Numbered from the whole stretch's first letter, positions 26,685-51,167 are shown. The stretch: DNA of 63,759 nt, filler included, from Octopus bimaculoides (GCF_001194135.2; 7 parts of 7 records of this genome joined end to end with filler, not necessarily neighbours in it); one strand, 5' to 3'. Translations and numbers: made by a program. The notes: generated by a model from the letters alone, not told the origin.

Positions 26685-26699
26685 TATATATATAATTTT

Positions 26700-27101
26700 T
26701 TTACTTGTTTCAGTCATTTGACTGCAGCCATGCTGGAGCACTGCCTTTAGTCGTACAAATCAACCCCAGGACTTATTTTTTGTAAGCCTAGTACTTATTT
26801 TGTCGGTCTCTTTTGCTGAACTGCTAAGTGACGGGGATGTAAACACATCAGTATCGGTTGTGGGGGGACAAGAACAGACACGCAAATACACACACACACA
26901 CACACACACACATACACATATATATATATATATACGTATATATACGACAGGTTTCTTTCAGTTTCCGTCTACCAAATCCACTCACAAGGCTTTGATTGGC
27001 TCGAGACTATAGTAGAAGACACTTGCCCAAGGTGCCACGCAGTGGGACTGAACCCAGAACCATGTGGTTGGTAAGCAAGCTACTTACCACACAGCCACTC
27101 C
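26700..27101 (-). mobile_element. Full-length family A SINE
   Basis: Reverse complement of the 3602-4003 element. Confidence 0.85.
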
Positions 27102-28149: not shown

Positions 28150-28222
<73 letters not shown>

Positions 28223-28225
28223 TAA

Positions 28226-28620
28226 GGGTATGGCTGTGTGGTAAGAAGTGTGCTTTCCAACCTCATAGTTTTGGGTTCAGTTCCACTGCGTGGCACCTTG
28301 TGCAGGTTTCCTCTACTATAGCCTTAAGTTGACTAAAGCCTTGTGAGTCAATTTGGTAGATAGAAACTGAAAGAAGCCCACCATACATATATATAACAAG
28401 CTTCTTTCAGTTTCCATTTACCAAATTCACTCACAAGGCTTTAGTCAACCTGAGGCTATAGTAGAAGACAGTTGCCCAAGGTGTGTATGCCTGTGTTTGT
28501 CCCCCACTACTATTTGACATCTAATATTGGCATGTTTATGCCCTTGTAACTTGGCAGTTTAGAAAAAAGAGATGGAGAGAAGAAATACCAAGCTTAAAAT
28601 AAAAAAAACTATACTTGGTT
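28226..28620 (+). mobile_element. Family A SINE with an internal inverted duplication
   Basis: SINE head and body up to 28378, an inverted copy at 28400-28484, then the SINE 3' half resumes. Confidence 0.75.
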
Positions 28621-29418: not shown

Positions 29419-29819
29419 GGTAAATTTTCAGATTAACACCCGCACAATTTTCACTAGGGTGTTAGGGTTCGTACTACTAAAGCAGCACGGTCCCGAACGC
29501 GCAGTCGCGCGTCCGCACTAGCTAGTCGTGAGTGGTCGATCCTAACACTAACCTTAACCCTAACCCTAACCCTAAACATGTATTCATTTACACACGCGGG
29601 TTAGGGTTAGGGATAGGGTCAGGGCTAGGATCGACCACTCACGACTAGCTAGCCCGGACGCGCGACTGCGCGTACGGGACCGTGCTGCTTTAGTAGTACC
29701 GTTAGGGTCAGGGTTTAGGGTTAGTGTTAGAGTTAGGGTTAGTGTTACGGTTAGGGTTTAGGGTTAAGGTTAGGGTTTAGGGTTAGGTAATCGTGCGGGT
29801 ATTAATCTGAAAATTTACC
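29419..29819. mobile_element. MITE with GGTAA termini and TTAGGG-like internal repeats, hosting a nested palindromic MITE (29470-29700)
   Basis: 31-bp outer TIR GGTAAATTTTCAGATTAAYACCCGCAC with a degenerate 8-bp TSD AAATTGTG/GAATCGTG. Inner arms of about 74 bp (GTACTACTAAAGCAGCACGG...GATCCTA) plus inverted (CCCTAA)n/(TTAGGG)n, flanked by GTTAGGGT(T/C). Confidence 0.8.
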
Positions 29820-31744: not shown

Positions 31745-32356
31745 ATGGAACTTCTGAATGAAAGCTCAGCACTGCTCAGTAACTATGAAGTCTACACTTT
31801 ATTACTGGACATCCAAGCTGGCCGAAATGGTCAGAGCAAACCCACCAAGAACCAGACCAATTTAGCTACAGTAACATATGAAACTGTTAAATATTTAGAA
31901 AGTACCAGCTGTAAGCATTTGAATGCACCGGCTGTGAAAGAATTTATTCGGCATTTGGCACCGTTCCATTTGACAAAGGCCGAGAAACTGCAGCTGCTGA
32001 ATCAGCGTCCCACGATGGCTGTTGAGATCCAGTTGTTGATTGAGGAAAGTGAAGAACGGTTAACCGAAACACAGGTGTATCAGCTTCTTGATGTGGTGTC
32101 CAAATATCTTCCTGATGGTTCATTAGATCTGTCTGAGGAGAGTGATGACAAAATTGTATACGGAGATGAAGGAGGAGAAGAAGAGGATGATCAGCAGCAG
32201 GAGAAGGATGAAGAGTTAGAAGAGAGAAGTGTTAAGATAGAACAAGATGAGAACGATGTGTCTGTGGAGGGAGAAGAGGAGGTTGAAGAAGTCGAAGAGG
32301 AAGGTGGGTCCCTCGTTATGGACGTAACATCACCTTTAAATGAGGATTCTTCTTAG
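31745..32356 (+). CDS. CRCP: DNA-directed RNA polymerase III subunit RPC9 (CGRP receptor component protein), 203 aa, single-exon CDS
   Basis: SALLSNYEV, NLATVTYETVKYL, LTKAEKLQLLNQRP, AVEIQLLIEESEERLTE match the remembered human CRCP/RPC9 sequence closely. AATAAA near 32413. Confidence 0.95.
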   Translation: MELLNESSALLSNYEVYTLLLDIQAGRNGQSKPTKNQTNLATVTYETVKYLESTSCKHLNAPAVKEFIRHLAPFHLTKAEKLQLLNQRPTMAVEIQLLIEESEERLTETQVYQLLDVVSKYLPDGSLDLSEESDDKIVYGDEGGEEEDDQQQEKDEELEERSVKIEQDENDVSVEGEEEVEEVEEEGGSLVMDVTSPLNEDSS

Positions 32357-33645: not shown

Positions 33646-34005
33646 TACTCTTTTACTTGTTTCAGTCATTTTGACTGTGGCCATGCTGGAGCACCGCCTT
33701 TAGTCGAGCAAATCAACCCCAGGACTTATTCTTTGTAAGCCTAGTACTTATTCTATCGGACTCTTTTGCCGAACCGCTAAGTTACGGGGACGTAAACACA
33801 CCAGCATCGGTTGTCAAGTGATGTTGGGGGACATACACATACATATATATACACACATATACGACGGGCTTCTTTCAGTTTCCGTCTAACAAATCCACTC
33901 ACAAGGCTTTGGTCGGCCCGAGGCTATAGTAGACACTTGCCCAAGATGCCACGCAGTGGGACTGAACCCGGAACCATATGGTTGGTAAGCAAGCTACTTA
34001 CCACA
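33646..34005 (-). mobile_element. Family A SINE
   Basis: Reverse-complement match to 3602-4003. Confidence 0.85.
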
Positions 34006-34930: not shown

Positions 34931-35054
34931 TTATTGTTTTACTTCTAGTCGACTGATGACTGAAATTCTTCGAGATCGAGGAATATGTTTTCCTTTGAAC
35001 ATTGATGTTTTGTCTGGTAAGACTTCATGTGTGTAGTCAAAACGAGCTTTATCC
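34931..35054 (-). CDS. ALKBH7: ALKBH7 exon 4 (last)
   Basis: Acceptor TTATTTTTGACAG, phase 2. Encodes (R)DKARFDYTHEVLPDKTSMFKGKHIPRSRRISVISRLEVKQ*, with the distal His (THE) and the RISV 2OG-binding Arg motif. Confidence 0.95.
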
Positions 35055-36181
35055 CTGTCAAAAATAATAGAGAGAGAAGTGTCAAGTTTTGATAAGGGGG
35101 GGGGGGCAGAACTAAAATAACAAAATAAATTTCTTAAATGAAAATCCACAGATTAACTATATTGATTCTTTAAATGGACATAAAATAACTGACTTACAAG
35201 GGGAATCTGTGATATTATGCGTTACTATCTGACAGAATCTGATTTTGTTTGAGGAAATAATAAAATTCCTTTTTCTGTCCCTTTTGTTGTAAATGTGTGA
35301 AATATTGATCTTAATTTATGTCTGTCTCTCAAAGGATCAATATTTACAAAATATTGAATAAGAATGAATTGATCCCAGAACATAACTGGTATTATATCAT
35401 CTCTAGAGGAGAACTTGGACTGAGGGATGAAACTAAATTATTGCAAGGCTGTTACCATTTCTACCAGCTGTCTACCCTGACAGGGGCCACAATCAGTAAG
35501 GGAAGGGGGGGGGCGGTTGAGATGATTAAATCAACCCAAATATTTTATTGGTACTTATTGTATTTCCTCCAGAAAGATGAAAAGCAAAGTCAACTTTAGC
35601 AGGATTTGAACTCAGAATGTAAAGGGCCATAACTGCAAACTGAAAGACGTTTTTACCAATACTCTCAGTTTTGCCATAGATATCTTTAAAATATTCAGAC
35701 TGGATCTGTAAAGAAATAATTAGTCAACAGACAGACTATTCCAGTGTTTTGACAAAACTGAGATGTTAATGTCTAGACACCACTTTACATATTTCCAACA
35801 AGCCAAAGGGATGGGGGTAGGATCTTTTGTTTCAGTCCTCATTAACTACCATATAAGGACGACAGTGAAATAAAAACGGTAAAACTTGAATTCAATTTTT
35901 AAAATTATGGAACTCACTATTGAATTTGTCACTGTAAGCTAATGGAAACATTTGTTAATGAAACAATGCTCCCACTGCTTACAGTGTCAGGATGGATAAC
36001 AGCACAGGGAAATATGGGCTTTAGACATGGATAGAATACAACATTGAAGTGATGTAGACTGTTGACATTTTGGCTGTACTATTGACCTTTGACCTTCAGT
36101 GGGAAGGGCATAACTTTGAGCAAAGAATCTATGAATGAGATTAAAAGAAGATATTTTAGAGTGATATGACAAAATACAAAC

Positions 36182-36306
36182 CTTAATATATAGAGAGATC
36201 TTGGTAAAAGAAGAATATCACCAGATTTGCTTTTATCTTTCTCACAAACCAGTCTCATTACACTTTCAGAGAGGAGACTGAGACCAGCTATTGCTCGGCC
36301 ACAAAA
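36182..36306 (-). CDS. ALKBH7: ALKBH7 exon 3
   Basis: Acceptor TTTTTATTTTCAG, donor GTTTGT. Encodes [41 protein letters not shown](R); 125 nt, phases 0 and 2 consistent with its neighbours. Confidence 0.95.
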
Positions 36307-36430
36307 CTGAAAATAAAAACAAATATATTTTATTAATATTTAGCAGAAGCAACAGAGTGACTCAAATGCCGAAAGTTTTATGTGTTAAATGCCAACATAT
36401 GAAACTTGCCTCTTGAGTTACTATGTTGCT

Positions 36431-36773
36431 TCCGGGTTCAGTCCCACTGCGTGGCACCTTGGGCAAGTGTCTTCCACTATAGCCTCGGGCCGACCAAAGC
36501 TTTGTAAGTGGATTTGGTAGACGGAAACTGAAAGAAGCCCGTCGTATATATGTATATATAAATATATGTATGTGTGTCTGTGTTTGTTCCCCCACCATCG
36601 CTTGACAACCGATGCTGGTGTGTTTACGTCCCCGTAACTTAGCGGTTCAGCAAAAGGAGACACCGATAGAATAAGTACTAGGCTTACAAAGAATAAGTCC
36701 TGGGGTCGATTTGCTCGACTAAAGGCAGTGCTCCAGCATGGCCACAGTCAAATGACTGAAACAAGTAAAAGAG
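36431..36773 (+). mobile_element. Family A SINE in ALKBH7 intron 2
   Basis: Match to the 3602-4003 element, 5' end slightly truncated. Confidence 0.85.
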
Positions 36774-37134
36774 TATATACTTTGGTGATTTGCTGGAGAA
36801 GACTTGTCATACCAAGTGAAATTGTAGATGTGACCAGTGCTGGTGAAAAGCACCCACTACACTCTCAGGGTGGTTGGTATTAGGAAGGGCATTTAGCCAT
36901 AGAAATCATGCCAAATCAGACTGGAACCTGGTGCAGCTCTCTGGCTTACCAGTTCCAGTCAAACTGTCTAACCCATGCCAGCATGGAAAGCAAACTCTAA
37001 ATGATGATGCTCATATCTTGAGTTCCATTTTTCCTGTTTGCATCACCATACCTATACACACACAGATGTGTGTGAATTCCATTATAATGAATTTATTCCA
37101 ATCCCTGACCAGAAACTGATTGAAACAAGGTTCA

Positions 37135-37349
37135 CCCTTTAGCATTCAGATTACTCTCTCAAATGTAATGCTTATTTATTCATATTGTTTTGAATTAAAC
37201 ATGCATTATCTTATCGTTTTGAGATTTCAGTGATGTGATTATTTTAGAATGACATTGTAGGGTAGATGTGAGAGACGAGGTTTGGCCATTTTTACCATAA
37301 AACAGATAGAATATTTGGGCCAGAAATGACCAGTTTAATTGCTAAAGGG
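37135..37349. mobile_element. piggyBac-like MITE (related decayed copy at about 48620-48840)
   Basis: CCCTTTAGCA...TGCTAAAGGG termini flanked by TTCA / TTAA. Confidence 0.65.
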
Positions 37350-37533
37350 TTAAATGAGCTTTGAGAAAAATAATTACAATGAATATTTTGGTATGATGGT
37401 AAAAAAAGTGAATACCGGAATTAGACAACTCACAAACTATCTATAGTAAGATTTGAAACTGAAATACCCATATTCGATTTTAACATCACTGTCACAGTTC
37501 ACCTTGGTTAACATTACATCAATTTGTACTTAC

Positions 37534-37707
37534 TCTAACAGAATCCACATGGGCCTTAATGTAACCATCTTTGTTAATGTCCAGGACATGTACAAAGGGC
37601 AGTGGAACTTCTGAAGGTTGAAAGGCCACACTCTTTACTCTGTCAAGTATTTTTGTGTTGGAGTCATTCCATTGTTTCCTTTCAGTTTCTCGGTAACCAT
37701 GAATAGC
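37534..37707 (-). CDS. ALKBH7: ALKBH7 exon 2
   Basis: Acceptor TTTGGTTTTTAG, donor GTAAGT. 58 codons AIHGYRETERKQW...VHVLDINKDGYIKAHVDSVR containing the HxD iron-binding motif. Confidence 0.96.
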
Positions 37708-37779
37708 CTAAAAACCAAATGAAAACATCTATTTTTGAGAATATATAATTATTATGCACATTAATAATTTGTACAGTAA

Positions 37780-38345
37780 TGACTGCGCTGATATGGGCAT
37801 GTGATGTGCAGGGACAAGGACAGCTATGTAAAGAAGTGCCGATCTCTAACTGTGGAGGGAACCTGTGGTAGCAGTAAACCCAGGAAGTCATGGGATGAAG
37901 TGGTGAGCATGATCTTCGAACTTTGAGCCTCACAGAGGAAATGACTAGTGACTGAGACCTTTGGCAATATGCTGTGCTTGAAAAGATACATCAAGTCAAG
38001 TGAAATCGTAGTCATGGCTGATGTTGGTGTCACATAATTAGCATGTAAAGAACACCATTTGCGCATTGGGCCTCACAGAGGCAACGTGGTTGAGTTCCTT
38101 TCAAGTGTTGGGCCTCACAGAGGCAATAACTCAGACCTTTGGCATTATACTGTGCTTGAGAAGAAGACCCATCAAGCTGAGCAAAATCGCCACGTAAAGG
38201 CACCCATTACACACACAGAGTGGCTGGTGTTAGAAAGGGCATCCAGCCATAGAAAACCATGCCAAATCAGATTGGAGTCTGGTGCAGCCTTTCAGCTTAC
38301 CAGCCCTGGTCAAACCATCCAACCCATGCCAGCCTGGAGATAATG
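37780..38345 (+). mobile_element. RTE LINE 3' end in ALKBH7 intron 1
   Basis: Degenerate SYVKKCRSLTVEGTCGSSKPRKSWDEVV...TEEMTSD, followed by the shared RTE 3'UTR and a (GAT)n tail. Confidence 0.8.
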
Positions 38346-39239
38346 GATGTTAAATGATGATGATGATATATAACCTATGCCAGCATGGAAAACATGTTAA
38401 ATGATGATGATGATGATATATATGTATATATATATAGGGGCAGGTAATGTAATGGGTGTGCACAGGTAGAAGGAGTGGGGTATTAGGAGAATATGTTGTG
38501 GGAAAGGGATCCATTGGATATATAGTGTGTAGGTAGGTAAGTACAGCAAATTAACAAGTCTTGGTCATTGTCATCTCACAACGTCTTAGGATCATTTCTC
38601 ACATGTCTTCCTGTTCTACAGGTTCCCCCCACAGTTAGAGGTCATCAGCATAGAAGAGCAACCAGTCTTAAATTCCTCTGTTATGGCCCAGAGGACTATG
38701 ATAAACAAAAGAACTGATTCTTGGTGAACTTCTACCTGCACACTAAATTCATTATTATACTCAGTGCTAAGGCAGTGAGGCTGGCAGAATCATTAGTATG
38801 CTGGATGGAATACTTAGTGGTATTTCACCCATTGCTATGTTCTGAGTTCAAATTCCACTGAAGCCATCTTTGCCTTTCATCCTTTCGGGATCAATAAATT
38901 AAGTACCAGTGAAACACAAGGGTCAATTTGATCGATTCCCCTCCTGCAAGCTGCCCTTGTGGCCTGACTTTCACCTTAGTGATAGCACCCTTGTGCATGT
39001 CACGGCTCTCACCAACCACTCATGTACCCCTAGCCTCTGCATTGACCACCAGATGAGGGATCTTATCAAAGGCTATCTCCATGTCAACAAATGCCAGGTA
39101 CAGCAATTTAGTTTTCACTAAAATACTTGTGCGCTTGCCTTACTAGGAAGACAGCAACAGTAGTGCTTCTCCCTGGCACAAAACCAAAGTTTACCAATGT
39201 TCTATGACATGATAACCAGTGGCATGAGGTGTTCCAGAT

Positions 39240-39750
39240 TGCAAGACTGTGTGTCAGCAAAAATCATGTAAGAGAGAATTGTGTTTAGATGGATGAGGAT
39301 AAACTTGCAGTTAGTGATTCTGCAAAGGAAGAGGTCTAGCAGTGTTGCTATGAAAGGCTGCTAAATGTGGAGGATGCATGATAGGAGAATCTTCTTAATG
39401 CAGACCCAACAGAGGGGGTCAACTATCCAAGTTGATAACAGCATGGTAGATAAAGCAATTAAACACATCATGACTGGGAAAGCCCATAGCCCATCAGGAA
39501 TTATTACTGAGATGCTTTAAATATCTGGTAGAGTGAGATATGACCTGTGACACTTTGAGTTAATCAGGCTGTCTAGGAATGGATCTTATACAATGATAGA
39601 TGTAGCAGCATTATCAGCAAAGGTAAGAGTGATACCTTAGACAGAAGTAATTAGAGGTATCAAACTGTTGGTCCAGGTCATGAAAGTTACAGAAAGGGTC
39701 ATAGCTCAACTAATTAGAAAGATAGCTAAGCTAAATGAGATGCAGCTAAC
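39240..39750 (+). mobile_element. Decayed RTE LINE reverse transcriptase N-terminal fragment
   Basis: Frameshifted KAIK..TGKA.SPSGI.TEML...KGK...RGIKLL.QVMKVTERVI motifs. Confidence 0.7.
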
Positions 39751-40654
39751 TGCATCTTATCTAGGTTAACTGGACTTTCAGTGGCAAACCAAACAGCACT
39801 CATAGTATGTACCTATTACTTTAAGTCTGTTGTAAAATACTCCTTACATATTACATATTCTATATATATATATATATATATATATGACAGGCTGCTTTAC
39901 ACTTACCAAATCTACTCAATGGTTTAATTAGTCTGGGCTAGAATAGAAGACAGCCAAGGTACCACACAGTGGGACTGAACTTGAAACCATATGGTTAGAA
40001 AGCAAACTTCTTAACCACAGAATCAGGCCTGCATCTTTTCTAAACCACAATCATGCTTGCACTTATATGTGTGCGTAGTCAATGTCTGTGATGAGAGGAA
40101 GCTTCTAGCAAGTTGAGTCTATGTTCAGCTTCTATTTCTGACTCTAACCAATTTTACATTGCTAATGGTGCCGGCAAATCATGAACACCACATCTTCTGT
40201 TTCCTGTCTTAAAATTAGTTGATTAAATTACACTTCATGCTTGAATTGTTTAGACTTAAGAAATATTTAACAAAGCTCTTCATTATATTATGGACTCATC
40301 TCCTCCCTCTGAGGTGATTTTCTGCCATTCCCTGTTTGGTCTCATCTGATTCCTGTGTAAAAAGAAAAAGCTTAAAATAAATGGTACTATGGAAAACGTT
40401 GAACTTCTAATTTCAGCTAAGAAAAAGTCTCTCTGAAAACGTTAAAATTCTCTCACATCATAACCAATTCCGTTCTGTGATTTTTAATATTAGTTCGGTT
40501 CTGTAATAACATCATGCACAACAAATTATTTATTAGAAAAGATTTTTTTTGTTTTAATGGGGGTGAGGAATAAAAGTAGATACAATGGTATTGGGGTTGA
40601 CCTCAGAGGTCACATGAGGGCAAACAAAGAAACATAATTGGTGGTGGTACTTAC

Positions 40655-40972
40655 GTCATCCCAATGGTCGTATTCATAGCGCAGTCTCTTTAGGTAGGGT
40701 TCTATTTCAGCCAATAAACTCTCGTGTTCTTCCAATGACAAGAAATCTTCGTGTATTTCCACATTGTTCTGTACAAGTTTTTCAGTGTCAGGGTCACTGG
40801 CCGATAAAAGTCGTTCCCACCATTTACTACAGTCGCCATTTGTAGACACAGTTCCTCTTTTACATAGAGAATTGCTTGTGAAAGCGAGAAGAGGTCTGTT
40901 CCTTGTGACACCTAGTAATACAGGTGTGAAATACACCAGTTTTGAGATAGAAAAGGTGAGGCAAGAAGTCAT
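40655..40972 (-). CDS. ALKBH7: ALKBH7 coding exon 1 (Fe/2OG dioxygenase AlkB homolog 7; spliced product 246 aa)
   Basis: 106 codons ending EPYLKRLRYEYDHWDD|GTAAGT, matching human ELRRRRYEYDHWDA. The N-terminal about 45 aa are free of acidic residues (mitochondrial-presequence-like). All four exons join in frame. Confidence 0.95.
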
Positions 40973-41412
40973 TGTTTAAAGCTGTGAGGACGGAATAGAG
41001 TTAGTTAATTATTCCACTGTTTATTTCTTCCCCTATAAACTATTCGAGAATAACATATTTTGTTACAAAAACCCTCCAGTTCTGCTCTCCGTAAATAATT
41101 CCATTTATTTTCATTAATTCCAAACGAAACCGCAACAAGAAAACTGTTTTTTTAATATGTAATCGGTGTACGGGAACTTTGTGATCTTACAGAAATATAT
41201 TCCGGTATGTAACTTTTTTATTGTCGATTTAAAATTAAAGTTAGTAAACATACCACTTTCTATTTAAAACATATTTGTTAGTTTAATATCATGTTAGAAT
41301 TAGTAGTTTACAAACTAAATTAATGAAAATGTATCAAAATTTATCTTTTAGAAAAATTCGAACTTTGTTTCAGAGAAGGGATATAATTTTGTCGTCACCG
41401 GAATAATGTAAT
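40973..41412. promoter_or_regulatory. Probable bidirectional promoter/5'UTR region shared by ALKBH7 and the TauD-like gene
   Basis: Divergent ATGs 440 bp apart with a repeat-free, CpG-containing interval. Confidence 0.7.
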
Positions 41413-41815
41413 ATGTCTACTGCTAGGAAGATGGCGAAGAGCTTATACGGTTTACATCGTCGGATGATTGGTGCTGAAGTAACTGGTGTAAAACTTGCAG
41501 AACAGGTCTCCGAAGAAGTCATTGAACAGCTCAAGAAAGATGTCCATGTTCACAAGTTGCTATTGTTTCGTAATCAAGGTGTTATCAGTGGAGAGAGACA
41601 TGTAGAGATCAGCCGGTGGTTTGGCGAACTCGAGTCTACTTTCTACAAACACCCGAAATCTCCCCACCCAGATGTGTTCAGAGTGTCAAATGACGAACGA
41701 CAGGGTTGCAGGAACGTTGGAAGGACAGGATGGCACATAGACGGAAGTTTTATGCAGCAACCATTTAAATTTTCATTTTATTATATAGCTTCAGCACCGA
41801 TGGCCGGAGGGACAG
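41413..41815 (+). CDS. TauD/TfdA-family Fe(II)/2-oxoglutarate dioxygenase, coding exon 1
   Basis: IGAEVTGVKL, HKLLLFRNQG, ISRWFGEL, DVFRVSND, GWHIDGSF (HxD) and GGT motifs. Donor ACAG|GTGAG, phase 1. Confidence 0.92.
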
Positions 41816-42876
41816 GTGAGAAATTTTAATTTTTAACAGTTTTCATTTCCTATATTTTATGCACAGCAATTTAAAATATATGGAAGAGGTGATGTTCATA
41901 TCTTTCTAGAACCATTCTTTACCGGAGACCTCCATATCTGGTAATATCTACTTTTATATAATGTTCGGCTGGCTGTGTGTAAACCCCCTGTTTTGGAAAA
42001 TTTCGAAGTACTACAAAAATAGTCAATGTTTATAGGTTGTACACGTGTCTAACGACACCTCTATTCATCTTAGACGTTAAAAATAATATTTTTATTGTAG
42101 AAATACCATTGTTTTGAACATATACCTGAAATTAAATATAAACTAGATGCTCACGAGTCTCAGCCACCACATTCTCGACGTTGCTGCGATAAAATTTGTG
42201 CTTTTAGTTTTATTGACGATTGAAAATGGTATTATCAAAACCATGAGAGAAGCCATTCATAAATGTCAGGATTCGAGTAAGTATNNNNNNNNNNNNNNNN
42301 NNNNNNNNNNNNNNNNNNNNNNNNNNNNNNNNNNNNNNNNNNNNNNNNNNNNNNNNNNNNNNNNNNNNNNNNNNNNNNNNNNNNNNNNNNNNNNNNNNNN
42401 NNNNNNNNNNNNNNNNNNNNNNNNNNNNNNNNNNNNNNNNNNNNNNNNNNNNNNNNNNNNNNNNNNNNNNNNNNNNNNNNNNNNNNNNNNNNNNNNNNNN
42501 NNNNNNNNNNNNNNNNNNNNNNNNNNNNNNNNNNNNNNNNNNNNNNNNNNNNNNNNNNNNNNNNNNNNNNNNNNNNNNNNNNNNNNNNNNNNNNNNNNNN
42601 NNNNNNNNNNNNNNNNNNNNNNNNNNNNNNNNNNNNNNNNNNNNNNNNNNNNNNNNNNNNNNNNNNNNNNNNNNNNNNNNNNNNNNNNNNNNNNNNNNNN
42701 NNNNNNNNNNNNNNNNNNNNNNNNNNNNNNNNNNNNNNNNNNNNNNNNNAGAGAATTTTGAAAAGAAAATACGAAACCGGTTATTTCTCCAAAAACAATG
42801 TTTCTATACTCAAAATTTTATAACATTTTTCTATACTTTAACCATATAACACAAGGCTTCTGTAGTTTTTTCACTC

Positions 42877-42909
<33 letters not shown>

Positions 42910-43318
42910 CACACACACTGAATTGAAGCAGTGGAAGAATTAAATACGGTTATAAAGTTTCGGTTGACAATATCGACCACACACACATATGAATCCACTT
43001 TTCCAAGCTTGTATGGATCAGACATTTTGTATGTGTGGATGCCCTTCCGTCACCGACCCTCAACTATTTTCATGTAATATTTCACCATGCCTATACAAGC
43101 TGATTCGAAAGGAAGAACACCTCTTGCATGACAGTGACACTTGCTTACTACCCTTACCCAATGTTAAGACAAGGGGACAGTAAAACACACACATACACCG
43201 TTCATTTTTCTTTCAGTTTTCGTCTCCGATATCTACTCACTAGAAGACTAAAGGTGTGTATATGTATGTGCGTATATTTTGTATATATATATATACGTAC
43301 ACACACACACGTATGCAT

Positions 43319-43354
<36 letters not shown>

Positions 43355-45404
43355 GTGTGTGTGTATATACTCATACATACGCATACATGTTTATAATTAC
43401 CTTTGCACGCATATACGTTTAGATATGTGTGCGTGCGCGCAAGTTTGTTTACATTTCCTAGATTGATGAAATCTGTAAAATGTTATTCTTTACTTTGGAA
43501 AGGAAATAATACTTTGACAACAAGAATTTAATATTTAATTTCGTACATATAAACTAAATACAATTTACGATACAAATTTGGAGTTTTATTTTGATTAAAA
43601 TTTTACTGTATTTTGTCTATTTATTGTCGCTGACTGTCACTCACGCCCACTCTATTTGTTGTTTTATTGTTCTTTACCCAGCATGACCGACGAGGCATAT
43701 TGTGTTTCATTATATGTCAGCTATCGCGGTATTGGTGTTACCGTCTTAAATCAAATTAATTTCTTATTTAGATAAAATAAAAGTATGCCATATTAATTAA
43801 TAACTCATTAAAAACGTAATTTCTACTGTATTAGTGGTGTTTTATGGGTGCCGGCATGGCTGTGTGGTCGGGAAGTAAGTTTTTCAAGTCTGTGGTTTTG
43901 AGCTTTATCTTGCTGTTCAGCACTTTAGGCAAGTGTTTTTAAATTGAACATTTATATTCATATTGAAAGAATGATGATGTTAAAATTCCGTTGCACCATC
44001 ATCATCATTTCACATCTGTTGCTTATGCTGGCATTGGATTGGATGGTTTGACCAGAGCTGGAAGGCTACGCCAGACTCGTCTGCTTTTGGCATGGATACC
44101 CTTCCTAACACCAATCACTGAGTGTGTAAAGATTGCTTTTACATGTCACTGGCACAGGTGCCATTTGCACGACACCAGTATCTGCCATGACTGCGATTTT
44201 ACTTGACTTGATACATCTTCTTCTCAAGCATGGCATAATGCCAAAGATCTCGGTCATTCGTCATTGCCTCTGTGTGGCCCAACCCTCCAAAGATGCTTTT
44301 CACGTGCCACCGGCATCAACCACCTTGCCTCCATGAGGCTCAATGCTCGAAAGATGTGAGTTGTAGCCGCCCGTCAATTGGTGTAGTGGCTGCTTGGAAG
44401 GACAGAAAAAAATCACACTAAAGTGTGAGTCTAAACTATCTGGTTTTGTAACAACTGCTCAGTATAAGTGGGGAGGAAATGATACTGTTGGAAGATATTG
44501 GTTTCAAATTTTGGCACAAGGCCAGCAATTTTGGTGGCAGGAGTAAGTTGATTACATCAACCCCAGTGCTCTATTGGTACTTATTCTCTTGATCCTGGAA
44601 GGGTGAAAGACAGAGTTGATCTCAGTGGAAATAGATCTCAGAACGTGAAGATAGACAAAATGCTGCTAAGCGTTTTACCCAGCGTGCTAATGATTCTGCC
44701 AGCTCGCTGCCTTATATTGTTGGAAGATATTGAAATCATTGACATTTCCAGTTGTCAGTTGATAAAAGAAATGTTTTGCAGAATAAGCTTTATGTAAAGC
44801 ACGACAAATTGCTGAGTATTTTTTGTTTTTTTCAATTAGGCTATGAGGCCATAATGTACCTCAGCAGAAACGTCTGCTGGTGCACAGTCTGTAAGACAGT
44901 CAAAAATGAGTACAACTACAAGCACAAGATATTTTTTTAAAACATAATAAATAGCTTAATTGTTACCTTATTGACACCTGAGTAGAAGTAATAAGATTCA
45001 ATCTAATGAATAAAGGATTAATAACAGAAGAATGTATGTTATTATTCTTAACGTAAGGATGGTACATGGTCAGGAAAGATTATGAACATCAAGGCAGGAT
45101 GTTGGGATGTTAGACAGAATGCTTCTCGGTGTCTGGTATCTCAGTCTTTGTCATCTTGCCTGAAAGGTTCAGCGATTTACAGAAAAACAAGACAAAAACA
45201 GGTGCATGAACAACAAACAGGTGTATTAGTTTGATGCTTGGGAAAGTGAGAAAGTCTTTTATGTTTTGAGTCTATGCTCTTCAACAGAAAGGAGTATGAG
45301 GAAATAAACAGAGAGAAGGAAAAAACTTGTGGATTTAGCGCTCTCTCTCTTTCACACACACGTGGATGAATGGAGATATATATATATATATATATATTTA
45401 TTCT

Positions 45405-45665
45405 TACACAACATTGAAAAGCACAAGCATCGACCCNNNNNNNNNNTTCAGCGGACTTCAAGAAAGCCCGAGTCGCAAGAGCTGAACTCAAGAGATGGGA
45501 GAGAAAGCAGCGCCTTCTCCTTCCCAAACCAACCCCGTCTATCCCTTGTCCACAATGTTCCCCATATGTTTCCTGCAACCCTTGGATTGCGGAGCCATCT
45601 GCGGTTCAAACACTCAGGAAAATGAACTGTATTGCAAGCTCGGAAACACGAGACACAGCCAACAA
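45405..45665 (+). mobile_element. RTE-like LINE C-terminal zinc-finger end
   Basis: Frameshifted ARAELKRWERKQR...IPCPQC..MFPATLGLRSHLRFKH* followed by a short 3'UTR. Confidence 0.7.
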
Positions 45666-45673
45666 CATATGTA

Positions 45674-45714
<41 letters not shown>

Positions 45715-46939
45715 TTACACACAAAATACCTTATGTTTATTTACATCTAGGTTTCAACTTCATCTTCCCTTTATAAGAAAGTGTGTTGTAATGGTTTATT
45801 CTGAGTTTATTAGGTTGCAAATCTTACTTTTCCTGAATAAAAGTTGAGATAGATGATATATGTGTGTGTGTGTGTTTTACATGCTTATTAATCCCTCTAA
45901 TAAAGTACGCTTATTCTACAACAAATGCTTGTCATTGTTGATGAACATGTGGCACTTTAGAATCATTTCTGATCTGGAAGTCTCTGTCATGCATACACTC
46001 TCTCTGTACACCATTTCTGAGTAAATATATCTGGTAATGGAACTATGTTTATAAACTATTGCTTTCCAATATAGAGATTCTGTTTCATACCTTTTCCAAT
46101 CAGCTTGATCACATATTATTTATTAGTCACTTCAAATCCACTATCATATAAAAATAATTATTTTAAATGCCCTTTTACTAATATAACAGACAAGGTTCTT
46201 TTGTCGTGAAGAAGGTTTCTAAACAGCCATATTCTGTGTTTAAGATGTTATGGGAGGAGAAACTAGAAAACTTAGATTGAATTAAATGTTCTTGAATGAA
46301 ACTGGAACAAAATTAGATAGTTTTATCAAGTCTATGTATCAAGTCACGTGCATATAGATAACTGTACACACAGTTATATATGCATAGATTATGATATATA
46401 TACTGTCACATATACATTTAAGTAACTGTACATTCAGATACATTCACATGTAGATAACTATTACATAAAATTATATATACACTAAGATAACTATGCATTC
46501 AATCATATATATATATACACATTACAGTCACGTATTATACATAGATAAGTATGCAATCAGTTAAACTCATAGATAACTAACTGAACATGCTGTCTGTCTG
46601 TCTCTCGCACACATATACACACACATGTGGATGAATAGATAAACTTGAAAATGCAGTCATATACATAGATACATACATACAAACAAACAAACAATCCAAT
46701 ACAATACTATAAAAATTTATAGTTGCATTAGACATTAATGTTCAAGGTCTCTTGTCTCTATCAGTTCTGCAGTTTCGAAGAGAAGGGATTGTCGAAGTGT
46801 CATAAGGCGTGAAATATTTAGAAGAATTCGGTAATATTTGTATTTTTGTCGAACAGATCGGGCCAAAGTGGTCTCCCCTTCCATATAATGTAGCTCCACC
46901 TCGTAATACAGATCTGATGAGTCATTTCTAACTTGAAAA

Positions 46940-46976
<37 letters not shown>

Positions 46977-47762
46977 CATCTAATGAAAGGAAAGGACAGT
47001 ACCCAACTTACAGCGGGCCTATGCTGGCTCCACTGCCTGTACTATTTTGCGTTTGTGGAGATATAAATATAATGTTATTTTAGTATTAAGGGAGATAACT
47101 CTTCAACCATCCCATCAAACCACTGACAACTTCGAAAGTAAATTAATGTCCACCCCTTCGTTTTATTCAGTTATTTGAGCTTCCACTTCTACAATACTTT
47201 AACACTGACGAAGAAGACGTTTAAGAACTGCTTTTAAAGATATTCTTTTTTAGTTTGAATACCACTAGNNNNNNNNNNNNNNNNNNNNNNNNNNNNNNNN
47301 NNNNNNNNNNNNNNNNNNNNNNNNNNNNNNNNNNNNNNNNNNNNNNNNNNNNNNNNNNNNNNNNNNNNNNNNNNNNNNNNNNCCCCCCCCATCAAAAAAA
47401 ATTCGGGTCTTGTGCCTACAGTAGGAAAGATTATTTTAGTTATTTATGAATTCAAGATGAACATATACCAACACAAATTATTGTCTTATTAATTAGATTA
47501 TTTCATTAGCAACACGGTAATTAATAATTACAAAATACAGATTATTAATCTAAAATGTATCTTTCACAAAATAGGTCTACTTCAAATTTTCTTGTCAACT
47601 TTAAAATTATTTGAGAAAAAAAATGAATAAAATCAGAAAAGATAAATTTACTTCGGTTTCTCCACCCCTATATATTGTGTGATGATTTTTCTTTGAACTT
47701 CACTGTTTTACCTAACCGTATATGATATCAAGGTATTTTGACTTCTCACTTGAGGAATTCAT

Positions 47763-47958
47763 TACTCTTTACTCTTTTACTTGTTTCAGTCATTTGACTG
47801 TGGCCATGCTGGAGCACCGCCTTTAGTCGAGCAAATCGACCCCATGACTTAGTCTTTGTAAGCCTAGTACTTATTCTTTCGGCTTCTCTTGCTGAACCGC
47901 TAAGTGACTGGGACGTAAACACACTAGCATCGGTTGTCAAGCGATGTTGGGGGGACAA

Positions 47959-48010
<52 letters not shown>

Positions 48011-48163
48011 GACGGGCTTCTTTCAGTTTCTGTCTACCAAATCCACTCACAAGGCTTTGGTCGGCCCGAGGCTCTAGTAGAAGACACTTGCGCAAGGTGC
48101 CACGCAGTGGGACTGAACCCGGAACCATGTGGTTGGTAAGCAAGGTACTTACCACACAGCCAC
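47763..48163 (-). mobile_element. Full-length family A SINE in TauD-like intron 1
   Basis: Reverse-complement match to 3602-4003. Confidence 0.85.
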
Positions 48164-48899
48164 GTTGACCTTTTTACATGTTTTTTGTTGTTTTGCCCTA
48201 GTTGAGCTGGCATCAAGGACTTATCAAATGTAATCATTTCCTTTTCTTGTATATCTAAGAAAATATGTACTTCTTATATATTTTTATCTGAAAATCTTCC
48301 ATCAAACATTAGTCACAATTTATGTTCCTAACACTAGCTTAATGATAACCAAGTTATTTACTAATTTCTCTGTTATACTTATAATTAATTGAAAGAAGCA
48401 CAGGGCCTCGCAAAAGAAATATGGTAATAAAAGGTTAATACTATTTTCGTTTGGCAAAAAAGACAAAGGAAAAATAATGATATTCATTCTTTGTTTTGGG
48501 TTCCTTTAACTGAGACCCCTCTGTTAAAAACCAGACCCCTTTAGTTTGACGATTTCTTTTCTCACCAGTCTTGAGCATCTTAGGAAATGCTATGGATTCT
48601 TTCCTTTTGCAGCTCACTAAACCATAATCTTTTAGCATTTAAACCAGCCATACCTGGCCCAAATCTATGTTTTATGTTCAAACTGGCCAGATCTGGCCTC
48701 TCACACCTACCCTACAATGTCATTCTAAAAATAAGCAATCACATTATTGAAATCTTCATGCTATTAGATAGTGCATGGTTAATTCAAAACAATGTGAACA
48801 AAATGCATTACACTTGACAGATTAATCTGAATGTTAAAAAGATAAATAGAAAAAGAAAGAAGTTCATTGTACGATGACAGTCTTACATTTTTATTCCAG

Positions 48900-49039
48900 C
48901 ATTTGTTTCGTTGCATGATGTCATAGAAAATTTATCAAAAGAGAAACGAGAATCCTGGGAGAAGTTGTGGATGGTGAGTGATCGTCGCTCGAAACTCATC
49001 CATCCTCTGATTTACCCTCACCCAGTAACCAAGTCACCG
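48900..49039 (+). CDS. TauD/TfdA-family dioxygenase, coding exon 2
   Basis: Acceptor CATTTTTATTCCAG and donor CCG|GTGAGT. The phase-1 join gives GGT-A-FVSLHDVIENLSKEKRESWEKLWMVSDRRSKLIHPLIYPHPVTKSP, matching the TauD GGxT.F.S...Y..L and HP.V..HP.T motifs. Confidence 0.9.
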
Positions 49040-49209
49040 GTGAGTAGAACAAGGGACATCTTTTTAACAACACCTTTTTAAAGCAGACTTTATTGGTTTC
49101 CTCTAATTAAATGCAAGTCAAATTTTTTTGCTGTTGAGTTTTGTTATACTTGTTTAAATGGCCTCATTGTATTGCTGGTACTTCTTTTACTGATCCACGA
49201 AGGATGAAA

Positions 49210-49442
49210 GGCAGTGAGCTGGCAGAATCGTTAGCACGCCGGGCGAAATGCTTAGCGGTATTTCGTCTGCCGCTACGTTCTGAGTTCAAATTCCGCCGAG
49301 GTCGACTTTGCCTTTCATCCTTTCGAGGTCGATTAAATAAGTACCAGTGATGCACTGGGGTCGATATAATCGACTTAATCTGTTTGTCTGTCCTTGTTTG
49401 TCCCCTCTGTGTGTAGCCCCTTGTAGGCAGTAAAGAAATAAG
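49210..49442 (+). mobile_element. Full-length family B SINE
   Basis: Near-identical to 10051-10282. Confidence 0.85.
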
Positions 49443-51167
49443 AAGGATGAAAGATGCAGTTGAGATAGAAAATAATGTAGTTATACACATAAGAGGTGGT
49501 CACAACTGGAATGTCTCATAGACATGCTGAGAATTGATCTGGTGCTGAACCACAACATCCACATTGTGATAAAAGGTGGGAACAGTCGGAGGAGAGAGAG
49601 AGAGAGAGAGATTTGAAAGTGACCATGATGGAGTGGAGGTGTCCTAACATGGAAATCTCTCTCTCTCTCTCTCTCTCTGCTTCTCCCACACTTCACAACA
49701 TTTCCCTATTTCTCATCTATCAAAGCTTTTATTATACTGTTGCTCTACCCACACCCCCCACTTTACGTGCTGCCACTTATCACCTTCTCCTTCCTGACCT
49801 ACACTTATCTCCCTTTACCTTCCCTCGCAAACTGAAGCGCATCATTGACCGTATCTACATCCCTTTACACCATTCTACTGCATTCATATCTATCCCCATC
49901 TCTCACCATCTGTCACCCTTCTTTCACACACTTATAACTATATATTTATCCACTTTCTTCTACCTTGAAGGTACACCTTGACACCTAATCTCTACTATTC
50001 CTTCTCCTTTTCCAGCTGGGAAAGTCCTGTATCTCCTTGTGTCATACCTTACCCTCTCAATACCTGTGGAAGCACATGGCGTAGTGGTTAGGGTGTCGGA
50101 ATCATGATTGTAAGATTGTGGTTTCGATTCCTTGACGAGGTTGTGTTCTTGAGCAAAACACTTCATTTCGTGTTGCTTCAGTTCACTCAGCTGGCAAAAT
50201 GAGTAATCTTGTGACAGACCCAGCGTCCTGTCCAGGTGGGGAATTTATACATCATGGAAACCAGCAAACTGGCCCTTATGAGTCAATATGACTTGAAACG
50301 GATACCTTTGCCTTTACCTCTCAACACCTAGCATAAAGTTATCTCTCTCAATACTGTACTCACACTCATTTGAGTTGTCTTGTCCTGCACTTGACTTGGT
50401 GACCTCACTAGTGCTGGTGCCACAAAACAAAAAAGTACCCAGTACTCACTGTAAAGTGGTTGGCATTAGGAAGGGCATCCAACCATAGGACCCATGCCAA
50501 AACAGACATTGGAGTTTGGTGCAGTTCTTTGGTTTGTAGGATCCTGTTGAATCATCTAAATCTTACCAGCATGGAACAATGGAGATGATAGAACATGATT
50601 TGGCTGCTATTTCTAGCAGATTGAGTGATCATGAAGCTCCTTCATGACTTTATTTCATTTTTCTTTTACTTGTTTGTCATTGGACTACTTGAAGAAATTG
50701 ACCCTTGTACTTATTTTTGAAGTCTGGTACTTATTCTGTTGGGATCTTTTGCTGAACTGCTAAGTTACAGGGATGTAAACAAACCAACACTAGTTGTCAA
50801 GTAATGAGTGGGACAAATTGCACACACACACACATACACACACACATATATATAAGTGCTAAGACACAGAATTCTGTCTTTGAGTCATTCTGTTACTTTT
50901 ACCAAATATTAATATATATATATATAAAAATTAATAAATTATAGGGTAGCAAAAAAAATTTTAGAAATTTTATTTACCACCAGTGGTCTAGCGAGAGTAA
51001 AAAAACAGTCAATAGACTATGTATTATTCATTTAAAATGCAGAGATGCCTATAATAGGACATCTACTNNNNNNNNNNNNNNNNNNNNNNNNNNNNNNNNN
51101 NNNNNNNNNNNTTAATTAATTAANNNNNNNNNNNNNNNNNNNNNNNNNNNNNNNNNNNNNNNNNNNN

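What the first reader, a model, noticed from the sequence alone, without database searches (positions are those of the whole stretch)
41413..49039. Spliced, bacterial/fungal-style TauD/TfdA dioxygenase in a cephalopod-type genome
Seen: two GT-AG exons join in frame (phase 1) to give about 181 aa with IGAEV.G, WHIDGSF (HxD), GGT.FVS and HPLIYPHP.T. Established: the familiar animal TauD-fold enzymes (BBOX1, TMLHE) carry an extra N-terminal domain, whereas a protein starting almost directly at GAEV.G resembles microbial TauD/TfdA/AtsK/XanA-type enzymes. The DVFRVSND...WHIDGSF region looks to me more TfdA-like than E. coli TauD-like, and the segment between the helix and the HP motif is short (WMVSDRR). 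Inference: an invertebrate-restricted or anciently transferred, intron-colonised dioxygenase of unknown substrate (sulfonate/taurine, sulfate ester, purine or xenobiotic). This is attractive in a taurine-rich animal. The distal His/Arg ligands would lie in exons not visible here.
Basis: partly seen in the sequence, partly recalled or inferred. Interest (0 to 1): 0.75.

Follow-up and report, generated by a model that had tools for sequence, protein, structure and literature searches.

The report
Octopus TauD-family dioxygenase gene, annotated
The two exons are real and belong to an expressed, already annotated Octopus bimaculoides gene for an iron/2-oxoglutarate dioxygenase whose family is old and widespread in eukaryotes, not a bacterial or fungal import, and whose substrate nobody has yet determined.

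Summary
Observation confirmed. Exons 41413-41815 and 48900-49039 join GT-AG in phase 1 to give 181 aa (Pfam TauD, E 6.6e-22). RNA contigs from four runs make exactly this join. The three assembly gaps all lie inside that intron and do not touch the reading frame.

The window is Octopus bimaculoides chromosome CM046623.1. The gene already stands in NCBI/UniRef as a 281-aa TauD/TfdA-domain protein. Two more exons beyond the piece carry the distal His249 and Arg265/Arg269, without stops.

Interpretation partly supported. The protein is a compact TauD/TfdA-type enzyme without the BBOX1/TMLHE N-terminal domain. It is not invertebrate-restricted and not a recent transfer. Orthologues at 52-85% identity occur in molluscs, insects, crustaceans, echinoderms, amphioxus, lamprey, hagfish, Trichoplax and green algae. 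More distant members occur in dinoflagellates, a choanoflagellate and a foraminiferan.

All three coding introns are shared with a bivalve, amphioxus, lamprey and Trichoplax, and two with a green alga.

The metal, 2OG and TauD-type oxyanion ligands are kept; TauD's amine-binding residues are not. Scores fall far below every curated equivalog cut-off, so taurine is unproven.

Ordinary gene of an uncharacterised, strongly conserved orthogroup. Modest interest.

The parts
41154..41204 (+). Non-coding 5' exon of the TauD-family gene (minimum extent). It overlaps, on the opposite strand, the 5' end of ALKBH7 exon 1.
   Evidence: An X9 RNA contig joins 41203/4 to 41373/4 (169 nt skipped, GT..AG). 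The X1 contig's loose end CAGAAATATATTCC equals 41190-41203.
41205..41373 (+). 5'-UTR intron (GT at 41205-6, AG at 41372-3), with an alternative acceptor AG at 41350-1.
41374..41815 (+). First coding exon. The CDS runs from the ATG at 41413 and encodes residues 1-134 plus one nt. It holds IGAEV, the HPKSPH motif (H80/S83/H85), the invariant C99 and R104, the metal ligands H108 and D110, and T134.
41816..48899 (+). Intron 1, phase 1. It contains the three assembly gaps and interspersed repeats. Its position is shared with bivalve, amphioxus, lamprey, Trichoplax and the green alga Micractinium.
48900..49039 (+). Coding exon 2, residues 135-181 (AFVSL...HPLIYPHPVTKSP).
49040..51067 (+). Start of intron 2 (phase 0), which runs off the piece. 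Coding exons 3 and 4 lie outside the piece at L001 22632-22787 and 27943-28089. Exon 4 carries H249, R265 and R269.
   Evidence: The RNA contigs continue about 490 nt past 49039, which fits 303 nt of coding sequence plus a 3' UTR.

Best explanation
This is the 5' part of a functional, expressed nuclear gene of Octopus bimaculoides. The gene has one non-coding and four coding exons and encodes 281 aa. Its product is a compact, single-domain Fe(II)/2-oxoglutarate-dependent oxygenase of the TauD/TfdA family.

It belongs to a strongly conserved, vertically inherited orthogroup. That orthogroup predates animals and probably dates to early eukaryotes. It has a compact bacterial sister clade and has no biochemically characterised member that I could find.

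Mechanism (inferred from the family). Fe(II) is held by H108, D110 and H249. 2-Oxoglutarate is bound by T134 and R265. O2 activation decarboxylates 2OG to succinate and CO2 and generates a ferryl species. The ferryl hydroxylates a C-H bond of a small substrate whose oxyanion (sulfonate, sulfate ester or carboxylate) is held by H80 and R269, as by H70 and R270 in TauD. If the substrate is a sulfonate or sulfate ester, the hydroxylated product would collapse to an aldehyde plus sulfite or sulfate.

The far end of the substrate is probably not taurine's amine, or is bound differently, because TauD's amine-binding residues are replaced or deleted. Family-specific invariant residues (S83, C99, R104 in a 5-residue insertion) occupy that side.

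Shown: gene structure, expression, family membership, ligand conservation, distribution, intron conservation and purifying selection. Inferred: catalysis, oxyanion binding and substrate class.
For: Sequence and splicing. Four RNA runs join the exons.

Identity: a 100% identical 281-aa NCBI/UniRef protein from O. bimaculoides. The window is identical to GCA_001194135.2 CM046623.1 over 19,655 nt.

Family: Pfam TauD at E 6.6e-22. AlphaFold2 model with pLDDT 94.7. Foldseek top PDB matches are AAD-1/RdpA, TauD, AtsK, Rv0097 and PlaO1, with TM 0.75-0.80 and E about 1e-20.

Ligands: hhalign against E. coli TauD gives probability 98.9. It aligns H99/D101/H255 to H108/D110/H249, T126 to T134, 'RIMHRAT' to 'RILHRTT' (R266/R270 to R265/R269), and 'HPVYPH' to 'HPKSPH' (H70 to H80). 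These residues are invariant or nearly so in 60 orthologues.

Vertical descent: orthologues at 52-85% identity occur across animal phyla and green algae. Intron positions and phases are shared. In an NJ tree octopus groups with Argonauta (100%) inside a mollusc clade, and the eukaryotic family separates from TauD and the deltaproteobacterial relative at 92%.

Selection: octopus versus Argonauta pN/pS is about 0.10 with synonymous sites saturated.

Bacterial sister: P0277, 263 aa, 33% identity, E 1e-39, with the same shortened architecture. It sits next to LysR regulators and an SsuD/SsuE-like luciferase-type monooxygenase plus FMN reductase, which weakly points to organosulfur chemistry.
Against: No activity has been measured for any member that I could find (literature).

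Scores against curated equivalog models are far below cut-off: TauD 64 vs 313, ScoE 75 vs 400, PtlD 54 vs 550. No known substrate can therefore be transferred.

The TauD N95 to C99 correspondence depends on gap placement in one profile alignment. I could not inspect model coordinates, so pocket geometry is untested.

Mollusc monophyly has only 47% bootstrap, in a simple NJ tree.

Their support comes from the annotated model, exact splice mapping and RNA contig length.
Confidence: 0.85

Rival explanations
1. It is a true taurine dioxygenase (EC 1.14.11.17). It would degrade the abundant taurine of a cephalopod to aminoacetaldehyde and sulfite, as many automatic annotations of its orthologues say.
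For: The TauD sulfonate-binding pair H70/R270, the HPxxPH motif and the RI(M/L)HR(A/T)T motif are conserved. The bacterial sister lies beside SsuD/E-like genes. Molluscs are taurine-rich (general knowledge). Papers on a tubeworm and a seep snail place animal 'tauD' genes in sulfur pathways, by annotation only.
Against: TauD's amine ligands are not kept: Y73 becomes Ser, N95 becomes Cys or falls in an insertion, and the S158/F159 loop is deleted. The NCBIfam taurine dioxygenase equivalog scores 64 bits against a cut-off of 313. RdpA and ScoE score higher than TauD. The same protein is kept at about 55-60% identity in green algae and terrestrial insects, so the function is not tied to taurine-rich marine animals.
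Confidence: 0.25
2. One reading: a bacterial or fungal TauD/TfdA gene was transferred horizontally into an invertebrate lineage and later colonised by introns.
For: The protein has a compact, microbial-like single-domain architecture. A bacterial clade of 263-aa proteins at 33% identity exists, so an ultimate bacterial origin, for example at or before early eukaryote evolution, is plausible.
Against: Three of three coding introns are shared by mollusc, chordate, vertebrate and placozoan genes, and two of three by a green alga. By my rough estimate, 3 x 7 intron pairs over about 846 positions give about 0.025 coincidences expected by chance. Members occur in animals, a choanoflagellate, green algae, dinoflagellates and a foraminiferan. 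The tree broadly follows taxonomy. No fungal hit is among the best 120. The family motifs are essentially absent from prokaryotic genomes.
Confidence: 0.05
3. It is an isonitrile-forming enzyme, as its NCBI product name '3-((Z)-2-isocyanoethenyl)-1H-indole synthase' (IsnB type) or the ScoE-type names of some orthologues imply.
For: The NCBI names. ScoE/Rv0097 are among the better PDB and NCBIfam matches.
Against: The ScoE equivalog scores 75 bits against a cut-off of 400. Orthologues carry at least eight different automatic names (TauD, TfdA, AtsK, RdpA, ScoE, IsnB, PtlD, Mb0100), which is the signature of best-hit naming with no close characterised relative. No isonitrile pathway partner is seen beside the gene; its neighbours are ALKBH7 and RPC9.
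Confidence: 0.03
4. It is a pseudogene, an assembly artefact or bacterial contamination in a gapped assembly.
For: Three assembly gaps lie inside the locus.
Against: Spliced transcripts occur in four runs. The gene has canonical introns and animal neighbours (ALKBH7, RPC9) in the same order in Argonauta. The full ORF is intact. pN/pS is about 0.1.
Confidence: 0.01

Closest known systems
E. coli taurine/2OG dioxygenase TauD (PDB 1GQW/1OS7)
   Same: Same fold (TM about 0.77). Same 2-His-1-Asp triad, 2OG-binding Thr/Arg, HPxxPH motif, R-x-x-H-R-x-T motif, and sulfonate-binding His/Arg positions. Single domain of about 280 aa.
   Different: Only about 22-28% identity. Y73 becomes Ser. There is a 5-residue insertion (RNVGR, with invariant R104) before the HxD. 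The S158/F159 lid loop is deleted. W248 becomes Ser ('SDN' instead of 'WDN'). It scores 64 bits against a cut-off of 313 for the equivalog model.
RdpA / AAD-1 (R)-phenoxypropionate dioxygenase (PDB 5BK9, 6D1O)
   Same: Best sequence match (E 4.9e-17) and best structural match (E 3.7e-21, TM 0.79) among solved structures. Its substrate is held through a carboxylate.
   Different: About 21% identity. It is a bacterial xenobiotic-degrading enzyme. Nothing suggests an aryloxyalkanoate substrate in animals and algae.
ScoE / Rv0097 isonitrile-forming oxygenase-decarboxylase and AtsK alkylsulfatase
   Same: Same TauD-type subgroup, with comparable sequence and fold scores. They are the source of several automatic names for the orthologues.
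   Different: Far below the equivalog cut-off (75 vs 400). No pathway partners.
Animal BBOX1 and TMLHE (carnitine biosynthesis)
   Same: Pfam TauD-domain Fe/2OG oxygenases encoded in animal genomes.
   Different: They carry a GBBH-like N-terminal domain that is absent here. They are not detected by sequence search at E <= 1e-3. In amphioxus a separate GBBH-like_N+TauD gene lies next door, showing that the two families coexist.
Cnidarian aboral 'TauD' genes (Clytia TauDa/b, coral and Nematostella apical-organ genes; PMC12225738)
   Same: Non-BBOX animal TauD-domain genes whose substrate is undetermined. Taurine was proposed from indirect evidence.
   Different: Orthology was not tested. No cnidarian is among the 120 best hits. 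The published start of Clytia TauDa (about 70 aa) does not resemble this family's N-terminus.
Uncharacterised 263-aa bacterial 'taurine dioxygenase' clade (P0277)
   Same: 33% identity over the full length. It has the same shortened lid, the same insertion before WH.DG and no Trp in the 'xDN' motif. It is the nearest prokaryotic relative found.
   Different: It has Asn in place of H80 and lacks C99 and R104. It is intron-less and lies in a LysR / peroxidase / OYE / SsuD-E-like neighbourhood. It is also uncharacterised.

Membership tests
TauD/TfdA family of Fe(II)/2OG oxygenases (Pfam PF02668) | Matches the family HMM above the gathering score | tested here: met
   79.1 bits against 27 for the two exons alone. 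PF02668 is precomputed for the full protein.
TauD/TfdA family of Fe(II)/2OG oxygenases (Pfam PF02668) | H-x-D...H metal triad | tested here: met
   H108 and D110 (exon 1) and H249 (exon 4, outside the piece) align to TauD H99/D101/H255 and are invariant in 60 orthologues.
TauD/TfdA family of Fe(II)/2OG oxygenases (Pfam PF02668) | 2OG C5-carboxylate ligands (Thr and Arg) | tested here: met
   T134 aligns to TauD T126 and R265 to R266. T134 is invariant and R265 nearly so.
TauD/TfdA family of Fe(II)/2OG oxygenases (Pfam PF02668) | Double-stranded beta-helix fold of TauD type | tested here: met
   AF2 model with pLDDT 94.7. The 50 listed Foldseek PDB matches are TauD-type enzymes (AAD-1/RdpA, TauD, AtsK, Rv0097, PlaO1), TM 0.74-0.80.
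TauD/TfdA family of Fe(II)/2OG oxygenases (Pfam PF02668) | 2OG-dependent oxygenase activity | not testable with these tools
   Needs an enzyme assay.
Taurine dioxygenase proper (TauD, EC 1.14.11.17) | Reaches the curated equivalog score (NCBIfam NF007104) | tested here: not met
   64.3 bits against a cut-off of 313.
Taurine dioxygenase proper (TauD, EC 1.14.11.17) | Sulfonate-binding His70 and Arg270 | tested here: met
   H80 and R269 align and are invariant.
Taurine dioxygenase proper (TauD, EC 1.14.11.17) | Amine-binding Tyr73, Asn95, Ser158 | tested here: not met
   These correspond to S83, C99 (next to a 5-residue insertion) and a deleted loop. The residue roles in TauD are from my knowledge of the 1OS7 structure.
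BBOX1/TMLHE (gamma-butyrobetaine / trimethyllysine hydroxylases) | GBBH-like N-terminal (DUF971) domain before the catalytic domain | tested here: not met
   The catalytic core starts at residue 17-19. Only PF02668 is found.
BBOX1/TMLHE (gamma-butyrobetaine / trimethyllysine hydroxylases) | Closer in sequence to BBOX1/TMLHE than to microbial-type TauD enzymes | tested here: not met
   No BBOX1/TMLHE chain is among the 31 PDB matches at E <= 1e-3.
Isonitrile synthases ScoE/IsnB (source of the NCBI product name) | Reaches the ScoE equivalog score (NF049937) | tested here: not met
   75.5 bits against a cut-off of 400.
Unnamed pan-eukaryotic 'compact TauD-like' orthogroup | High identity to members across phyla, plus the signature motifs FYKHPKSPHPDVFRVSN, VGRTGWHIDGSF, GDFIISDNLAVGHEA | tested here: met
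   52-85% identity to 59 orthologues, with the motifs invariant or nearly so.
Unnamed pan-eukaryotic 'compact TauD-like' orthogroup | Shared intron positions and phases | tested here: met
   Three of three shared with Argonauta, Tegillarca, Branchiostoma, Petromyzon and Trichoplax; two of three with Micractinium.

The most novel reading that the evidence does not exclude
The orthogroup is kept at about 55-60% identity from green algae to lamprey. It has its own invariant Ser83/Cys99/Arg104 substrate-side residues, and no jawed vertebrate appears among the 120 best hits. It may catalyse a conserved but still undescribed step of eukaryotic small-molecule metabolism. That step would be oxidation of an anionic, possibly di-anionic or sulfur-containing, metabolite that is neither taurine nor any substrate of a characterised TauD-family enzyme. 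Identifying it would add a new enzyme activity to animal and algal metabolism.
Probability: 0.4. Interest if true: 0.55.

Novelty: new member of a known kind. Interest (0 to 1): 0.3.

Why it matters
As a gene it is not new. The identical protein is in NCBI and UniRef, and hundreds of orthologues are annotated.

What remains open is the function. This is one of the few non-BBOX/TMLHE TauD-domain enzymes of animals. It is very strongly conserved across eukaryotic supergroups and carries eight or more contradictory automatic names. In the papers I found it is used in 'taurine/sulfur pathway' sketches without any assay.

A substrate assignment would correct widespread annotation. It could also reveal a metabolic step that humans lack; a 2025 paper states that BBOX1 and TMLHE are the only human TauD-domain genes.

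The work here also removes the more exciting reading, horizontal transfer into cephalopods.

Tried and rejected
(1) I looked for exon 3 inside the piece by three-frame translation of 49040-51067. None is there. It lies about 5 kb beyond exon 2, outside the piece.

(2) I asked to lay RNA reads on exons 3 and 4 in locus L001.

(3) The motif-based scan of GTDB genomes found only one relative, at 25% identity. This scan is blind to relatives that lack the family motifs. A bacterial sister clade was found later through the representative library.

(4) Seven literature searches for a biochemical characterisation of animal or algal members returned only annotation-level mentions, plus the cnidarian study in which function is explicitly undetermined.

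(5) I tried to judge orthology with Clytia TauDa. Only about 70 N-terminal residues are printed in the supplement, and they show no resemblance, so this is inconclusive.

(6) JC-corrected dS could not be computed because synonymous sites are saturated. I report pN/pS instead.

(7) The first bootstrap run timed out. I redid it with vectorised Kimura distances.

(8) ARAGORN finds no tRNA in the piece, so the tRNA-like look of the repeat at 49193-49380 is not confirmed.

(9) I considered a carnitine link from the neighbours in amphioxus (a GBBH-like gene) and Trichoplax (a carnitine acyltransferase). The octopods instead have ALKBH7 and RPC9 next door and Micractinium a DNA polymerase and unannotated genes, and none was called within 10 kb in Tegillarca or lamprey. 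I treat the carnitine neighbours as coincidence.

Full report
**1. Observation**

The sequence shows an ATG at 41413, preceded by an in-frame TAA 9 nt upstream. The open frame runs to 41815 and is followed by GTGAGA. A second open stretch runs 48900-49039, preceded by TTTATTCCAG and followed by GTGAGT. Joined, the 403 + 140 nt read 181 codons without a stop. The 181 aa match Pfam TauD (PF02668) at E 6.6e-22, 79 bits against a gathering score of 27. This is far beyond chance.

**2. The gaps**

The three runs of N (42285-42749, 45437-45446, 47269-47382) all lie inside intron 41816-48899. RNA-derived contigs of 1.10-1.19 kb from four runs in four studies lie on 41351/41374...41815 and then continue, at the very next contig position, on 48900-49039. 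The loose end after 41815 reads CATTTGTTTCGTTGCATGATG, which is exactly the start of exon 2. Orthologous proteins align across the junction without missing residues. So no coding exon is hidden in a gap, and the frame is continuous. Only the intron length is uncertain.

**3. What the locus is**

The window is identical over 19,655 nt to Octopus bimaculoides assembly GCA_001194135.2, chromosome record CM046623.1. A 281-aa NCBI/UniRef protein (P0001) is 100% identical to the 181 aa. Its name, '3-((Z)-2-isocyanoethenyl)-1H-indole synthase' / 'TauD/TfdA-like domain-containing protein', is automatic.

Exact splice mapping gives four coding exons:
- window 41413-41815;
- window 48900-49039;
- L001 22632-22787, outside the piece;
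- L001 27943-28089, outside the piece.

The introns have phases 1, 0 and 0. Exon 4 encodes WQNGDFILSDNLAVGHEATPETQFAVSEVGLRILHRTTIKG, which holds the distal His249 and Arg265/Arg269, with no stops. The RNA contigs continue about 490 nt beyond 49039. That fits 303 coding nt plus a 3' UTR.

A non-coding 5' exon (at least 41154-41204) is spliced GT..AG to 41374. An alternative acceptor gives an exon start at 41352.

**4. Anatomy of the protein**

A profile of 60 orthologues aligns to E. coli TauD with probability 98.9. The correspondences, TauD residue first, are:
- H99/D101/H255 correspond to H108/D110/H249, the metal ligands.
- T126 and R266 correspond to T134 and R265, the 2OG ligands.
- 'HPVYPH' (H70, Y73, H75) corresponds to 'HPKSPH' (H80, S83, H85).
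- 'RIMHRAT' corresponds to 'RILHRTT', so R270 corresponds to R269.

The metal, co-substrate and oxyanion-binding positions of TauD are therefore kept, and they are invariant or nearly so in the orthologues.

The amine-binding side of TauD is not kept:
- Y73 becomes Ser.
- N95 falls at C99, next to a 5-residue insertion that ends in the invariant R104.
- The S158/F159 lid loop is deleted.
- W248 becomes Ser.

The AlphaFold2 model is confident (pLDDT 94.7). Its best PDB neighbours are AAD-1/RdpA, TauD, AtsK, Rv0097/ScoE and PlaO1, with TM 0.75-0.80 and 20-24% identity. By sequence, RdpA is best (E 4.9e-17). TauD scores 8e-10 and a TfdA chain 1.4e-5. BBOX1 and TMLHE do not appear. Every curated equivalog model is missed by a wide margin.

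**5. Distribution and descent**

The 120 best database hits (E <= 4e-60, 53-85% identity) are animals and green algae, apart from unnamed transcriptome and metagenome sequences. The animals include cephalopods, bivalves, gastropods, hemimetabolous insects, sciarid flies, aphids, crustaceans, a scorpion, Priapulus, a nemertean, echinoderms, Saccoglossus, two amphioxus species, lamprey, hagfish and Trichoplax. The algae are Micractinium and Trebouxia.

In the 50%-identity representative library the next clusters are also eukaryotic. They are divergent paralogues in Saccoglossus, Solemya, Lingula and Priapulus, plus dinoflagellates, MMETSP transcripts, the choanoflagellate Diaphanoeca and the foraminiferan Bolivina.

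No fungus, no jawed vertebrate and no cnidarian is among the best 120. I did not test their absence directly. A 2025 paper states that BBOX1 and TMLHE are the only human TauD-domain genes.

All three octopus coding introns sit at the same aligned residue and phase in Argonauta, the bivalve Tegillarca, Branchiostoma, Petromyzon and Trichoplax. Two of the three recur in Micractinium: phase 1 after the G-x-T Thr, and phase 0 before W-x-x-GDF. My rough expectation for chance coincidence is about 0.025 shared sites, so the gene with these introns predates animals.

An NJ tree groups octopus with Argonauta (100%), recovers molluscs (weakly, 47%), insects, decapods, echinoderms and cyclostomes, and separates the eukaryotic family from E. 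coli TauD and a deltaproteobacterial relative (92%). Octopus versus Argonauta gives pN 0.09 with saturated synonymous sites, pN/pS about 0.10.

A motif scan of 185,579 prokaryotic species genomes found one weak relative. However, a compact 263-aa bacterial clade (P0277) shares 33% identity and the same shortened architecture. It lies among LysR regulators, peroxidases, an OYE and an SsuD/SsuE-like pair. An ultimately bacterial root in deep time is therefore plausible. A transfer into invertebrates is not.

**6. Mechanism**

Best-supported reading: a soluble Fe(II)/2OG oxygenase that hydroxylates a small oxyanion-bearing substrate.
- Shown: the fold, the ligands, expression and purifying selection.
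- Inferred: catalysis, the role of H80 and R269 in holding a sulfonate, sulfate or carboxylate, and desulfonation as the outcome.

Taurine remains possible (about 0.25). It is not supported by the amine-site residues, by the model scores, or by the equal conservation in green algae and land insects. The isonitrile-synthase name is an artefact of best-hit naming. Orthologues carry at least eight different such names.

**7. Comparison with the literature**

I found no assay of any member. Animal 'tauD' genes appear in pathway drawings for a tubeworm and a seep snail, by annotation only. Cnidarian aboral TauD genes are explicitly of undetermined function. Their orthology to this gene is untested, and the printed N-terminus of Clytia TauDa does not resemble this family.

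**8. Verdict**

It is wrong about restriction to invertebrates, about a bacterial or fungal character, and about transfer. The gene is already annotated. It is an ordinary, vertically inherited member of an uncharacterised but strongly conserved TauD-family orthogroup. Interest is modest (0.3) and lies only in the unknown substrate.

Noticed in passing
window 34931-41204, minus strand: An ALKBH7 orthologue (mitochondrial AlkB homologue 7) lies head-to-head with the TauD-family gene. Its coding exon 1 is 40972-40655 (donor GTAAGT), with further exons near 37707-37534, 36333-36200 and 35071-34931. Exon 1 matches the human ALKBH7 structure 4QKB at E 3.6e-7. RNA contigs cover 40654-41204 without a break, so its 5' end abuts or overlaps antisense the TauD gene's non-coding 5' exon (41154-41204). 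This implies a shared bidirectional promoter for two unrelated 2OG oxygenases. The same gene order is found in Argonauta hians.
   Followed up: partly
window 31745-32356, plus strand: An intron-less 203-aa ORF with an RNA_pol_Rpb4 domain (Pfam E 9.8e-27). It looks like RPC9/CRCP with an acidic C-terminal tail. It is called as a gene in the public assembly. A single-range 232-aa counterpart lies at the same relative place in Argonauta.
   Followed up: partly
L001 3519-20876 (window 34931 to beyond the piece): The collection's gene call for ALKBH7 (246 aa) spans as far as a point beyond TauD exon 2, overlapping the TauD gene on the other strand. The RNA contigs instead place ALKBH7's first exon at 40654-41204. 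This is either an alternative far-upstream first exon or a mis-joined model.
   Followed up: no
window 26699-27124, 33670-34005, 47770-48163 (+); 28204-28483, 36427-36775 (-): Copies, up to about 430 nt, of an interspersed repeat with an internal (CA)n(TA)n microsatellite, 81-96% alike. One copy sits in TauD intron 1. These repeats account for the enormous RNA contig depths (up to about 4e5) in intron bins, which are not expression of this gene.
   Followed up: partly
window 38780-38935, 49193-49380 (+); 44541-44728, 35517-35621 (-): A second short interspersed repeat family (71-78% alike). One copy lies just downstream of exon 2. It looks tRNA-derived by eye, but ARAGORN calls no tRNA in the piece.
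   Followed up: partly
window 29471-29572 / 29598-29699: A near-perfect inverted repeat: 102-nt arms, 92% complementary, 25-nt spacer. It is a hairpin-forming element of unknown nature.
   Followed up: no
window 40973: RNA contigs of two runs (X1, X9) read A where the assembly has T, one base upstream of the ALKBH7 start codon on the minus strand. This is presumably a polymorphism.
   Followed up: no
window 41350-41374: Two alternative 3' splice sites for the 5'-UTR intron give exon starts at 41352 and 41374. A third contig (X5) carries a different 29-nt leader (ACAGAAATGTCAACAGAATCTCGTGTTTT) that is not found in the stretch examined.
   Followed up: partly
L003 1-3599 (Branchiostoma) and L004 1-3663 (Trichoplax): In amphioxus the neighbouring gene is a GBBH-like_N+TauD (BBOX/TMLH-type) gene. 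In Trichoplax it is a carnitine acyltransferase. Two carnitine-related neighbours in two phyla are curious. No such neighbour is seen in the octopods or Micractinium, and no neighbouring gene was called within 10 kb in Tegillarca or lamprey.
   Followed up: no
L010 5481-6272, L011 10001-10792 (metagenomic bacterial contigs): A compact 263-aa bacterial TauD-like clade is the nearest prokaryotic relative of the eukaryotic family. It has a conserved neighbourhood of LysR regulators, glutathione peroxidase, AhpC-type peroxiredoxin, old yellow enzyme and a luciferase-like monooxygenase plus FMN reductase. It too is uncharacterised.
   Followed up: partly
P0121, P0123, P0128, P0135 (Saccoglossus, Solemya, Lingula, Priapulus): Several invertebrates carry a second, much faster-evolving paralogue (37-46% identity) beside the conserved orthologue. 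In Solemya velum the two locus tags are near-adjacent (007176 and 007178) on the same contig, suggesting tandem duplication.
   Followed up: no
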